DNA of 63,938 nucleotides, filler included, from Bipalium vagum (Eukaryota): assembly GCA_037834085.1 (NCBI GenBank). It is 4 parts of 4 records of this genome, joined end to end, with 100 filler letters (N's around TTAATTAATTAA, not from the genome) between each part and the next. Parts side by side here need not be neighbours in the genome. Positions count along the whole stretch, not along the records: positions 1 to 16,749 come from JBBMKC010095888.1; 3 more parts are not named here. One strand, 5' to 3'. The position numbers and the translations under genes are program-made. The notes under the pieces were generated by a model. The model saw only the letters and a list, made by a program, of their open reading frames with translations. It had not been told where the DNA came from and made no database searches. Shown piece by piece: positions 5,901 through 8,900 of this stretch (position 1 is the first letter of the stretch; every line of letters starts with the position of its first letter).

Positions 5901-8900
5901 TTTATTTGCCTTTGTTACCAATGAAAAATATTTATAAAGAAGGAAAGTGGTTGCCATATGAGCTAAACGAAAGAAAGATATAGAGAAGTGAATAAAAATA
6001 TATGAAATTTTGCTTGAAAGGAAAAAAACCAGTATTGAACCAAGAAAATCGATATCTGATTCAGAACAACCGTTCAAGTTGGCACTAAAGTATAATATTC
6101 ACTGCAAGAAAGTATTTGTTTTTATATGATGGAACCAAAGGAGTGTGATATATCATAAATTGTTAAAAGAAAACAAAACCTGAACCGCTGATTTTTACAA
6201 ACAATATTTGATAGATTTAAATAAGACATTGAAAAGTAAGCAACAAGAATAAGCGAACAGACTTGTAAAGTTATCTTACAGTATAATAACGCTTGGTCTT
6301 ATGTTGCCAAGATTTTAAGGGACACTTTGAAAGATCTTGTTTAGTATGCTTACCTCACCCGTCGTATTCAATGGACATTGTTCCAAGTGACGAGCTTTGG
6401 GAGTAAAACTTCAACAATTATGAAGGAATAGAAAAATAGCTCAATCAATTGATCACTTCGAAAGACTAATTGTTTTTTCTTCAAGGATTCTAACAACAGC
6501 CAATCATATGGGGAAAAATAATAGCAAACGATGAAAAATACTTTGATTAGTGTAGGTGTAATTGTTTTTTTTCATAAAAATAGATTTTTATTAGAAAATG
6601 TACCTAATTAATTCACATACTTAATATTTAGTTAAGAATTGATTTTAATTTTTCCTAATTTTTGTTTAATAACTAAAAATTATTATATAGAAATTTTTCT
6701 TATACTTTCTTTTAAAATATTAAATTTTAAACCACATTATAAATGCATCCTCACCATACTATGGAACAATCAAAATTTACAAGGAGCCAATCGTGTGCAT
6801 TAAAGGCGAAAGACATTGCATACTAAATCAATGTTGATAAGAATCATAGAATCTTTTAGAATGTTTTACTTCTATTCCTTTCATTAGATAACGGAATTCT
6901 GGACAAATAAAAGCAGAGCCAGCGTAGGCAGCGTCCACGTGAAGCCATATGTTATACTTCTCACAAACGGGTCCAATCTCGTCCAATTTATCAAAGGCAC
7001 AAGAACCTGGTGTTCCAAGAGTAACTACACACTGAAGAGAAAAAGATATTTTCTGTTAATATTTTATTAATATTTTTTAATTTGGAGAAATGCTCCATAC
7101 TGTCAATGTCATTTTCAGACTTTGTTATAATTTTATGTAAAAGTTTTATTAGTTATAAAAAGCACATTAGAGAAGTGAATATCCTGGATTCTAAAGGATC
7201 TTTAAAAATTATATTTTAAATGTTAAATCGTTTTGTTTTATATTTTAATATAAAAGGTGAATGGTGCCAGTTTTTTTTGTAAAATATTAATTACTTTATT
7301 TTCTGAATTATACTCAGACGAGCTGTTTCTCGTAACACCTGGACCAAATATATCAAAGTAATTACTTACATAGAATGGGATAAGACCATTTTTTATGTCT
7401 TCCTCTATCATTTCTTTTAAGACTGAAGTCGGCATTTGTCTTTTCACGGACTTCACTTTTTTCATTTTAATCATGCTCAACACTCCGGCCCTTTCTACAC
7501 ACAGGTTGGCCTTGGAAAAATTGATTCAATTAAACATTAAAGTATGAATTAATTAAATCCTTACCTGATCTGAATAATATCCCACAAGTTTACCGACTAT
7601 TGAATATTTGTCTTCATCTGGATGGGCCTTTAAAGCTTTACTTCTTGCGGCAAATAAAGCTACTAAAATTGCCTCACTGGAAGAAATCTAAAGGAAAAAT
7701 GAGTTTTAAGATTTTTTTATTTTTGAATGAGAGGGATAATGAAAATTTTAAGTTTTACTGCAAAAATATACTTTTTGTAATATTAAATAATAAAGTAGAG
7801 GTTTTTCTGAAAAGTTAATTAATAAAAATAATTATATTAATAGTAAATTATTTAATAGCTATATAATTATTATATATAAAGTATATAATTATATATGGAA
7901 AAATTATTAATATAATTACAATTTAAGAGATATAATTCCATCTCTTTTTTATGGAATATTATTTATTTATATAATATTATGAAAATAATAAATTAATATG
8001 AAAATGAAAACTTATAAAAATTCTTACATATATTAACCCTCTGCCTTCCTGGGACTGAGAGAGAAAAGCTTCAGGAAGGTGAAGCATTCTAGCAAGCCAA
8101 TCCACCATGGCTATTTCCATTTCAGTTCCAGCAGGGTTGGCCGACTTTAATTAATAAAAATATTTATTTTAACTTGAAAATAATGGAACTTGCCCAACTA
8201 AACCCCATAGACGATATTGCGTCAGAAAGTATATCTCCATAAATGGAGGCATACGAATTTCCAGTTGGAAAATAAGAATGGAAATTTGGATGATGCCAGT
8301 TTGTAATCTAGATCACTGATTATGAATCTTTTGAAAGAAAATTCAATCAAATAAATTGTTTCTTTTAGAAATATTATGGTTTTAATGTTTTATCACATTT
8401 CTGATCTTTACATACCTTGTATATTATAGTTGAATATTAAACTAATTTTATTTTTATAATTAATTTCAAAAAATTTACTCCTGGTATTATAACATTATCA
8501 ATGTCGGCCATAAGATCTTCCCAGTGATCTGGTTTTATTGGAGCTTCAGAGGGTATTAAAGTGTTAATATAACCCGGTTTTACTTGAGGAACTATCTTTC
8601 TTTCTTCAATATTTTCCAAATAGTCTGCTACGAAATCTATCATTTCTTTCGCTCTTTTCTGAAAGATTTTCAAGCCTTTTTCTGGATTGTTCAAGTAATT
8701 GCTTGCTTCTCCGTTTAACATTTGATGATCTTTGTTATCTGAACATAAAAGATTGAAAAAATTAATAATTTTTTATATAATATTTTAAAGATTCATAATT
8801 CTCAAATTAAAAAAACGTGTCACAATTATTAAGTTGGTATGAATTTTATAATTCAGCCAAGTTTTTTCGAAAAATCAGTACAAGTCATAAAAAATATATT

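What the first reader, a model, noticed from the sequence alone, without database searches (positions are those of the whole stretch)
6755..6822. Intact aromatic amino-acid decarboxylase gene without the PLP Schiff-base lysine (HKW->HDW): candidate pseudoenzyme
Seen: exon 8 reads [23 protein letters not shown], and the codon at 6792-6790 is GAT (Asp). Known: group II PLP decarboxylases have N-P-H-K-W here, and that Lys (K303 in human DDC) forms the internal aldimine and is essential. AAR->GAT needs two substitutions, so one base-call error cannot explain it and A-to-I editing cannot repair it. The 493-codon frame, all splice sites and the flanking motifs ([26 protein letters not shown]) are intact, while neighbouring TE sequence has decayed. 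Inference: the protein is maintained for a non-catalytic role such as ligand binding, regulation or scaffolding. A loose precedent is C. elegans basl-1, a bas-1 paralogue lacking this Lys.
Basis: partly seen in the sequence, partly recalled or inferred. Interest (0 to 1): 0.82.

Follow-up and report, generated by a model that had tools for sequence, protein, structure and literature searches.

The report
Lysine-less dopa-decarboxylase paralogue in a flatworm
A flatworm genome carries an intact extra copy of the enzyme that makes dopamine and serotonin, but it has lost the lysine that holds the vitamin-B6 cofactor while still evolving under constraint, so it is probably a "dead enzyme" kept for another, unknown job.

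Summary
[quoted passage not shown] The Asp codon GAT (6792-6790) is two substitutions from the AAA/AAG of its paralogues.

Thr246 and the His192-Ser-Ser triplet are also replaced. Asp271, Asn300, His302, Ser147/149 and loop Tyr332 are kept.

The genome is a flatworm's, near triclad planarians (62% identity to Schmidtea AADC). It holds a canonical copy and a sister copy (B). All of them arose by duplication within this lineage.

The reading frame and all ten introns are intact. One intron has a GC donor, which the canonical copy shares.

My codon model gives omega about 0.13 for the window-plus-B clade, against 0.05 for canonical AADCs. If the two same-genome sister branches are given equal synonymous length, omega on the window's own branch is 0.12-0.15 (interval 0.08-0.23) and neutrality is rejected. 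Without that clock, omega on this branch cannot be identified.

Best reading (about 0.55): a selected protein that cannot do Schiff-base chemistry. A very young pseudogene or a lysine-independent enzyme remains possible.

No RNA, reads or orthologue could be obtained. The cited precedent basl-1 lacks the VDAAYA/Asp271 motif, not the lysine.

The parts
8479..8721 (-). Exon 1 (81 codons, ATG at 8721-8719). It encodes the N-terminal domain, the fastest-evolving part of this copy.
   Evidence: weak PF00282 match. In exons 1-3 there are 36 unique amino-acid changes against 7 in the canonical copy.
8194..8307 (-). Exon 2. It is followed by a GC-AG intron (donor gcaagt).
   Evidence: PF00282, 39.7 bits. 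The canonical paralogue has a GC donor at the same intron.
8028..8144 (-). Exon 3. It ends in G-R-G-L-I-Y, where Gly141 is replaced by Arg.
7565..7687 (-). Exon 4. It starts I-S-S-S-E-A, the phosphate-binding loop; Ser147 and Ser149 are kept.
7370..7510 (-). Exon 5. It starts A-N-L-C-V-E-R-A-G: the His192-Ser193-Ser194 triplet is replaced by Asn-Leu-Cys (Asn codon 7507-7505). Sister copy B has the same replacement with identical DNA.
6870..7031 (-). Exon 6. It reads T-L-G-T-P, with Thr246 replaced by Pro (codon CCA, 7010-7008). H-V-D-A-A-Y-A-G is kept, including Asp271.
   Evidence: (PF00282, 89.6 bits).
6755..6822 (-). Exon 7, the finding itself. N-A-H-D-W stands in place of N-P-H-K-W; the Asp codon is GAT at 6792-6790 and the Ala codon at 6798-6796.
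3701..6754 (-). Intron 7 (3054 bases). It holds broken mariner-like transposase remnants on the + strand (about 4070-4500 and 5620-5985).
   Evidence: ORF lists. Weak HTH_48 (Mos1 transposase) match at 5619-5831, below the Pfam cut-off.
3610..3700 (-). Exon 8, the catalytic-loop region D-A-P-Y-M-K-T. Tyr332 is kept; Pro330, Leu333 and His335 are changed.
3470..3568 (-). Exon 9 ([11 protein letters not shown]...).
   Evidence: PF00282, 41.4 bits.
3201..3302 (-). Exon 10.
2961..3158 (-). Exon 11, with the stop codon TGA at 2963-2961.

Best explanation
The window holds a lineage-specific duplicate of the flatworm AADC gene. I call it W. It is kept as a protein-coding gene but can no longer carry out PLP Schiff-base decarboxylation, so it is a pseudoenzyme.

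Shown:
- The gene is intact.
- Lys303 is Asp, Thr246 is Pro, and His192-Ser-Ser is Asn-Leu-Cys.
- The residues that hold the cofactor's phosphate and ring nitrogen (Ser147, Ser149, Asn300, His302, Asp271), the substrate-pocket residues (Tyr79 to Thr82, Phe103) and loop Tyr332 are kept.
- W and its sister copy B evolve about three times faster at the protein level than canonical AADCs, but far below the neutral rate.

Inferred: the fold and a ligand pocket are still under selection while the chemistry is not. My preferred mechanism rests on AADC being an obligate dimer whose active sites are built from both chains. Under that view W acts as a non-catalytic partner, pairing with an active paralogue (the canonical copy or B) or with itself. 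It would bind PLP/PMP or an aromatic ligand without turnover and so modulate monoamine synthesis. Which partner or ligand is involved is a guess.
For: - Intact frame and splice sites; the GC donor is shared with the canonical copy.
- Asp aligns with Lys303 of human AADC. That column is Lys in 114 of 114 homologues. The ancestral codon is AAA/AAG.
- W deviates at 20 of 151 near-invariant columns, including 192-194, 246, 301 and 303, while binding residues are kept.
- All own-genome copies form one clade inside planarian AADCs (support 96/100).
- The W+B clade has omega 0.13-0.14 against a background of 0.048 (p = 9e-6).
- With equal synonymous length for the two same-genome sister branches, omega_W is 0.12-0.15 with a profile interval of 0.08-0.23. 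Omega = 1 is rejected (2dlnL 95-104), also separately in exons 4-7 and exons 9-11. Omega_W does not differ from omega_B. The clock itself is not rejected (2dlnL about 2).
- 6.2% of random substitutions in this CDS create a stop. More than about 3% neutral divergence would therefore be unlikely to leave the frame open.
Against:
- No orthologue was found in any other species, so conservation of the Asp is untested.
- Without the clock constraint, the likelihood cannot tell a short neutral W branch from a long constrained one, and omega = 1 is not rejected.
- Sister copy B was pieced together from three short contigs whose linkage is assumed.
- The W/B pair shows a stretch that looks like gene conversion, which could lend W borrowed constraint.
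- The whole W+B clade is relaxed and is losing conserved residues, which is also what slow decay looks like.
- The heterodimer or ligand-binding role is pure inference.
Confidence: 0.55

Rival explanations
1. W is a young unprocessed pseudogene. It worked as an enzyme, or as whatever copy B does, until recently. It then lost Lys303 and has not yet had time to collect a stop or frameshift.
For: - The duplicate is lineage-specific, with no orthologue found.
- No transcription evidence exists.
- The protein rate is three times that of canonical AADC.
- Clock-free models do not reject omega = 1 on the W branch.
- A 3-kb intron full of transposon remnants lies next to the key exon.
- The nematode parallels include an expressed pseudogene (F12A10.3) and a low-expressed dead copy (PMC514703).
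Against: - Under the same-genome clock, omega_W is 0.12-0.15 and at most 0.23. That leaves at most roughly 10-20% of the branch for a neutral phase.
- An open 485-codon frame with ten good introns limits neutral divergence to about 3% or less.
- In so short a time, two hits in the Lys codon plus Pro301Ala and Thr246Pro would be an unlikely coincidence.
Confidence: 0.22
2. W is still an enzyme with altered chemistry. It would use non-covalently bound PLP or PMP without an internal aldimine, or a lysine supplied from elsewhere. This could be an aldehyde-synthase-like or other side reaction, inherited from an Asn192-bearing ancestor shared with B.
For: - Cofactor phosphate and ring-nitrogen ligands, the substrate pocket and Tyr332 are kept.
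- Asn at position 192 is the switch residue of insect aldehyde synthases. Two of the 114 homologues carry it within D-Q-S-N-S-S.
- Purifying selection is present.
- From my own knowledge, not tested here: fold-type I enzymes without the lysine exist (the PMP-dependent sugar dehydratases ColD/E1).
Against: - No new lysine appears in any active-site segment. W-specific lysines sit at positions 1, 28, 176, 213, 223, 231, 396 and 461.
- Thr246 is listed with Lys303 among the residues essential in rat AADC (PMC514703), and it is also lost.
- Asp places a negative charge where the aldimine forms.
- No structure or assay is available.
Confidence: 0.18
3. The Asp codon is a sequencing, assembly or contamination artefact.
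For: The assembly is very fragmented (272,664 contigs). Reads could not be inspected.
Against: - There are three base differences within nine bases relative to every paralogue, so a chimaera of known copies cannot produce it.
- The locus is single-copy in the assembly.
- An independent contig set holds 99% of the sampled 31-mers of 6600-8800.
- Many further W-specific changes are spread over all exons.
Confidence: 0.03

Closest known systems
Canonical aromatic-L-amino-acid (DOPA) decarboxylase, Pfam PF00282; planarian Smed-AADC / DjAADCA
   Same: - Same fold family, matched exon by exon.
- 62% identity to Schmidtea and a soil-planarian AADC.
- Nested inside the planarian AADC clade.
- Same intron positions as the own-genome canonical copy, including the GC donor.
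- Asp271, Asn300, His302, Ser147/149 and Tyr332 are kept.
   Different: - Lys303Asp, Pro301Ala, Thr246Pro, His192Asn, Ser193Leu and Ser194Cys.
- 20 of 151 near-invariant columns are changed, against 6 in the canonical copy.
- The protein evolves about three times faster.
C. elegans C05D2.3 (basl-1), the bas-1 paralogue
   Same: It is a lineage-restricted duplicate of the serotonin/dopamine AADC. It has an open frame, lacks an essential catalytic residue, shows a raised KA/KS and has no known function (PMC514703).
   Different: basl-1 lacks the VDAAYA block with Asp271. Here that block is intact and the Schiff-base Lys is replaced instead. basl-1 has some cDNA evidence; this gene has none.
Insect aromatic aldehyde synthases (amd / DHPAA synthase)
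   Same: Asn replaces His192. W and B carry it, as do homologues P0267 and P0271, which carry Asn at 192 within D-Q-S-N-S-S. That insect aldehyde synthases carry Asn192 is from my own knowledge.
   Different: Those enzymes keep Lys303 and Thr246 and are catalytically active. W keeps neither.
Dead paralogues that partner with active enzymes (trypanosomatid AdoMetDC and PRMT prozymes; ODC antizyme inhibitor)
   Same: They are catalytically dead duplicates of oligomeric enzymes, retained under selection (abstracts listed; antizyme inhibitor is from my own knowledge). This is the model for the mechanism I propose.
   Different: They belong to different folds and families. No interaction has been tested for W.

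Membership tests
Group II PLP-dependent decarboxylase (PF00282), as a homologue | Sequence match to the Pyridoxal_deC domain across its length | tested here: met
   Eight of the ten exons tested (exon 10 was not submitted) match consecutive profile positions 1-341 of 375. Exon 6 scores 89.6 bits against a cut-off of 27. A genome search also matches exon 10 to positions 339-375.
Catalytically competent AADC | Schiff-base lysine in N-P-H-K-W (Lys303) | tested here: not met
   Asp (GAT, 6792-6790) aligns to Lys303. The column is Lys in 114 of 114 homologues.
Catalytically competent AADC | His192 stacking on the cofactor ring, with Ser193 and Ser194 | tested here: not met
   Asn-Leu-Cys in W. The columns are 98-100% conserved as His, Ser and Ser.
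Catalytically competent AADC | Thr246 | tested here: not met
   Pro in W. The column is Thr in 114 of 114 homologues. Thr246 is listed among residues essential in rat AADC (PMC514703).
Catalytically competent AADC | Asp271 in H-V-D-A-A-Y-A-G (salt bridge to the ring nitrogen) | tested here: met
   The motif is intact in exon 6.
Catalytically competent AADC | Catalytic-loop Tyr332 | tested here: met
   D-A-P-Y-M-K-T aligns to D-P-T-Y-L-K-H. I first mistook Tyr346 for this residue and corrected it.
Catalytically competent AADC | PLP binding and decarboxylase activity | not testable with these tools
   This needs purified protein. The spliced protein has no reference, so it could not be folded either.
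Pseudoenzyme | Homologue of an enzyme that lacks residues essential for its chemistry | tested here: met
Pseudoenzyme | Maintained by selection (open frame, dN/dS well below 1 on its own branch) | tested here: inconclusive
   With the same-genome clock this is met (omega 0.12-0.15; omega = 1 rejected). Without the clock it is not identifiable. The open frame and splice sites are met.
Pseudoenzyme | Expressed as a protein | not testable with these tools
   No RNA run holds the stretch.
Pseudogene | Stops, frameshifts or lost splice sites | tested here: not met
   None in 485 codons and ten introns.

The most novel reading that the evidence does not exclude
W, and perhaps its degenerate sister B, would be a flatworm-specific non-catalytic AADC subunit. 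It would heterodimerise with the active AADC and tune the synthesis of monoamines. These include the tryptamine needed for the gonadal signal beta-alanyl-tryptamine in planarians. This would be a prozyme-type or dominant-negative regulator, not yet described for a fold-type I PLP decarboxylase.
Probability: 0.1. Interest if true: 0.7.

Novelty: new member of a known kind. Interest (0 to 1): 0.4.

Why it matters
AADC makes dopamine, serotonin and trace amines. In planarians it also controls germ-cell and reproductive development through a tryptamine-derived dipeptide (PMC8994625, PMC11214079).

A selected paralogue that keeps the cofactor and substrate pocket but lacks the Schiff-base lysine would be a natural probe of what the AADC fold can do without catalysis, such as binding, sensing or regulating a partner subunit. 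It would add a second, independent case to the nematode basl-1 gene, whose role is still unknown.

If it turns out to be a dying duplicate, it is an ordinary by-product of a local gene-family expansion.

Tried and rejected
- **RNA:** no RNA run was offered.
- **Orthologues:** none turned up.
  - Exon 1 against 1.84 billion representatives gave at most 60% identity, mostly exon-sized fragments.
  - The exon-6 open frame against the 5.8-billion set gave nothing above 82% identity, over partial coverage.
  - The exact look-up of the exon-1 ORF found nothing.
  - The best 120 hits of a planarian AADC query were fetched; the 114 of canonical length that I aligned all keep the Lys.
- **Pairwise dN/dS:** Nei-Gojobori dS is saturated against the canonical copy.
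- **Relative-rate counts:** counts at synonymous sites looked symmetric. I discount them because the outgroup is near saturation.
- **Biopython ML dN/dS:** this timed out, so I wrote my own codon likelihood.
- **Tyr332 error:** I first read the D-x-R-H-W-Q tyrosine as catalytic Tyr332 and thought flatworm AADCs had lost it. That was wrong. That residue is Tyr346, and Tyr332 is kept.
- It was used only inside local scripts. So there is no structure prediction, no structure search and no dimer prediction for W.

Full report
**Observation**

The minus strand of 6822-6755 is a short exon. It reads [22 protein letters not shown] plus two bases of a Trp codon, between an AG acceptor and a GTGAGG donor. 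The Asp codon is GAT at 6792-6790.

Against all PDB chain sequences, the exon aligns to residues 293-313 of human AADC. The Asp stands opposite Lys303 and the Ala opposite Pro301. In an alignment of 114 full-length AADC homologues that column is Lys without exception. The two own-genome paralogues and two planarian mRNAs read AAA or AAG there, so GAT is two substitutions away.

**Gene model**

Reading the three minus-strand frames and the splice signals gives 11 coding exons:
- 8721-8479
- 8307-8194
- 8144-8028
- 7687-7565
- 7510-7370
- 7031-6870
- 6822-6755
- 3700-3610
- 3568-3470
- 3302-3201
- 3158-2961

Together they give 485 codons and a TGA stop, with consistent phases and no internal stop. 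Nine donors are GT. The donor of intron 2 is GC (gcaagt), and the canonical paralogue of the same genome also has a GC donor at that intron, so I take it as genuine.

The exons match consecutive parts of Pfam PF00282. Intron 7 is 3 kb long and holds broken mariner-like transposase pieces.

**Organism and family**

Exon 1, searched on its own, found a 510-residue protein from a soil metatranscriptome. That protein is 80% identical to Schmidtea mediterranea AADC and 71% to Dugesia japonica AADCA. The spliced model was compared only inside scripts. It is 62% identical to these planarian AADCs and about 54% to AADCs of other animals. In trees it sits inside the planarian AADC clade (support 100/100). 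The genome (440 Mb, 272,664 contigs, about 25% G+C here) is therefore a flatworm's, close to triclad planarians.

**Paralogues**

A Pfam search of the whole genome, followed by DNA searches with the window's exons, found several group II decarboxylase loci on short contigs.
- **Canonical copy (C).** It can be pieced together from contigs C164760, C177911 and C201606. It keeps His192, Thr246 and N-P-H-K-W.
- **Sister copy (B).** It lies on C8533, C209873 and C206488. It shares the A-N-L-C-V-E-R-A-G replacement of His192-Ser-Ser with identical DNA. It keeps Lys303 but reads S-P-H-K-F, and it has also changed Asn300, Trp304, Phe309 and Arg355.
- **Fourth fragment (D).** C217119 covers exons 1-3 and is very divergent.

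All own-genome copies form one clade (96/100), with W next to B (94/76). The duplications therefore happened in this lineage, after it split from the Schmidtea/Dugesia lineage.

W and B are identical over 77 bases at the intron 4/exon 5 boundary and 89-92% identical through exons 5-6. They are only 73-77% identical in exons 4 and 7. This suggests a gene-conversion tract. The linkage of the contigs into B and C is my assumption.

**Active-site audit**

Of 151 alignment columns that are at least 95% conserved, W deviates at 20, C at 6, and B at 13 of the 92 it covers.

W-specific losses include:
- Lys303Asp
- Pro301Ala
- Thr246Pro (all three arose on W's own branch)
- Gly141Arg

His192Asn, Ser193Leu and Ser194Cys are shared with B.

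Residues kept:
- Asp271 in H-V-D-A-A-Y-A-G
- Asn300, His302, Ser296
- Ser147 and Ser149 of the phosphate loop
- Tyr79 to Thr82, and Phe103
- Arg355
- Loop Tyr332

Thr246, Asp271 and Lys303 are among the residues cited as essential in rat AADC (PMC514703). No new lysine appears in any active-site segment. The pattern is that the residues doing the chemistry are replaced while the residues holding the cofactor and substrate are mostly kept.

**Selection**

Pairwise W-B dN/dS is 0.12, and dS against C is saturated. I wrote a Goldman-Yang type codon likelihood (F3x4) on the tree ((W,B),C,(two planarian mRNAs)).
- The W+B clade has omega 0.13-0.14 against a background of 0.048 (p = 9e-6).
- Within that clade, W does not differ from B.
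- With free branch lengths, the W branch can shrink to almost nothing with a high omega. Omega = 1 is then not rejected (p = 0.05-0.6), so the data alone do not fix omega on this branch.

W and B are sisters in one genome and have had the same time to diverge. I therefore constrained them to the same synonymous length. That constraint is not rejected (2dlnL about 2). Under it:
- Omega_W is 0.15 over all codons and 0.12 over the shared exons.
- The profile interval is 0.08-0.23.
- Omega = 1 is rejected with 2dlnL of 95-104, and omega = 0.5 with 36-45.
- The same holds separately for exons 4-7 and exons 9-11.

Compared with the canonical copy, the W lineage has 76 unique amino-acid changes against 27, at equal synonymous counts. 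The excess is largest in exons 1-3.

In this A+T-rich CDS, 6.2% of random substitutions make a stop. Neutral divergence above about 3% would therefore seldom leave the frame open.

**Interpretation**

The best reading is a protein kept by selection that cannot form the internal aldimine, that is, a pseudoenzyme (about 0.55). AADC is an obligate dimer with shared active sites. The most economical mechanism is therefore a non-catalytic subunit or ligand-binding protein that modulates an active paralogue. This step is inferred, not shown.

The rivals are:
- A very young pseudogene (0.22). It needs the two-hit Lys codon, Pro301Ala and Thr246Pro to have arisen within a few percent of neutral divergence.
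- A lysine-independent enzyme (0.18).
- An artefact (0.03).

**Comparison with known cases**

The nearest precedent is C. elegans C05D2.3 (basl-1), a lineage-restricted bas-1 duplicate with an open frame and a raised KA/KS. Asn192 recalls insect aldehyde synthases, which keep the lysine. Prozymes and antizyme inhibitor are functional analogies only. The planarian papers I read describe one aadc gene and mention no lysine-less paralogue.

**Limits**

- There are no reads, no RNA and no orthologues.
- The joined protein was used only in local scripts and was not folded, searched or docked.

**Verdict**

This is a real and intact lysine-less AADC paralogue in a flatworm, probably under purifying selection. 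It is a new member of the known class of dead enzyme paralogues. Interest is moderate (0.4) until expression or an orthologue is shown.

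Noticed in passing
G000 contigs C8533, C209873, C206488 (loci L048, L031, L042): Sister paralogue B keeps Lys303 but has His192Asn, Asn300Ser, Trp304Phe, Phe309Tyr and Arg355Ser. It deviates at 13 of the 92 near-invariant columns it covers. It may therefore be catalytically impaired or repurposed as well.
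   Followed up: partly
window 7546-7470 versus L031:1-77; window 7031-6823 versus L031:2016-2224: W and B are identical over 77 bases spanning the end of intron 4 and the start of exon 5, and 89-94% identical through exon 6 and intron 6. Exon 7, immediately after, is only 73% identical. This looks like a gene-conversion tract ending at the exon that carries the lysine codon.
   Followed up: partly
window 8193-8192 (intron 2 donor) and L034 around 1941: A GC-AG intron sits at the same position in W and in the canonical copy. Contig C217119, whose linkage to B is not established, has GT at this intron.
   Followed up: yes
alignment column of human Tyr346 (D-Y-R-H-W-Q); window exon 8 end, 3615-3613: This Tyr is Phe in the 11 flatworm-clade AADCs in the alignment (seven named species plus four unnamed relatives) and in six other, mostly non-flatworm, homologues. 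It is Leu in W, the own canonical copy and Opisthorchis. It is not the catalytic Tyr332.
   Followed up: partly
window about 4070-4500 and 5620-5985, + strand: Two broken mariner-like transposase remnants lie inside intron 7. One has a weak Mos1 HTH_48 match, and both show W-x-P-Y-E-L-like motifs. Neither has an intact frame.
   Followed up: partly
window 14877-15937, + strand: Open frames here give weak matches to Cep192 domain 8, ASH/HYDIN-type Ig-like domains and a CFAP74 Ig-like domain. They are probably exons of a neighbouring centrosome or cilium gene.
   Followed up: no
G000 contig C217119 (L038): A further AADC-type fragment covers exons 1-3 and has a very long branch (0.74 changes per site). 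It could be the 5' end of B or a fourth copy.
   Followed up: no
window 1604-1743: An assembly gap of 140 N lies downstream of the gene. It was left untouched.
   Followed up: no
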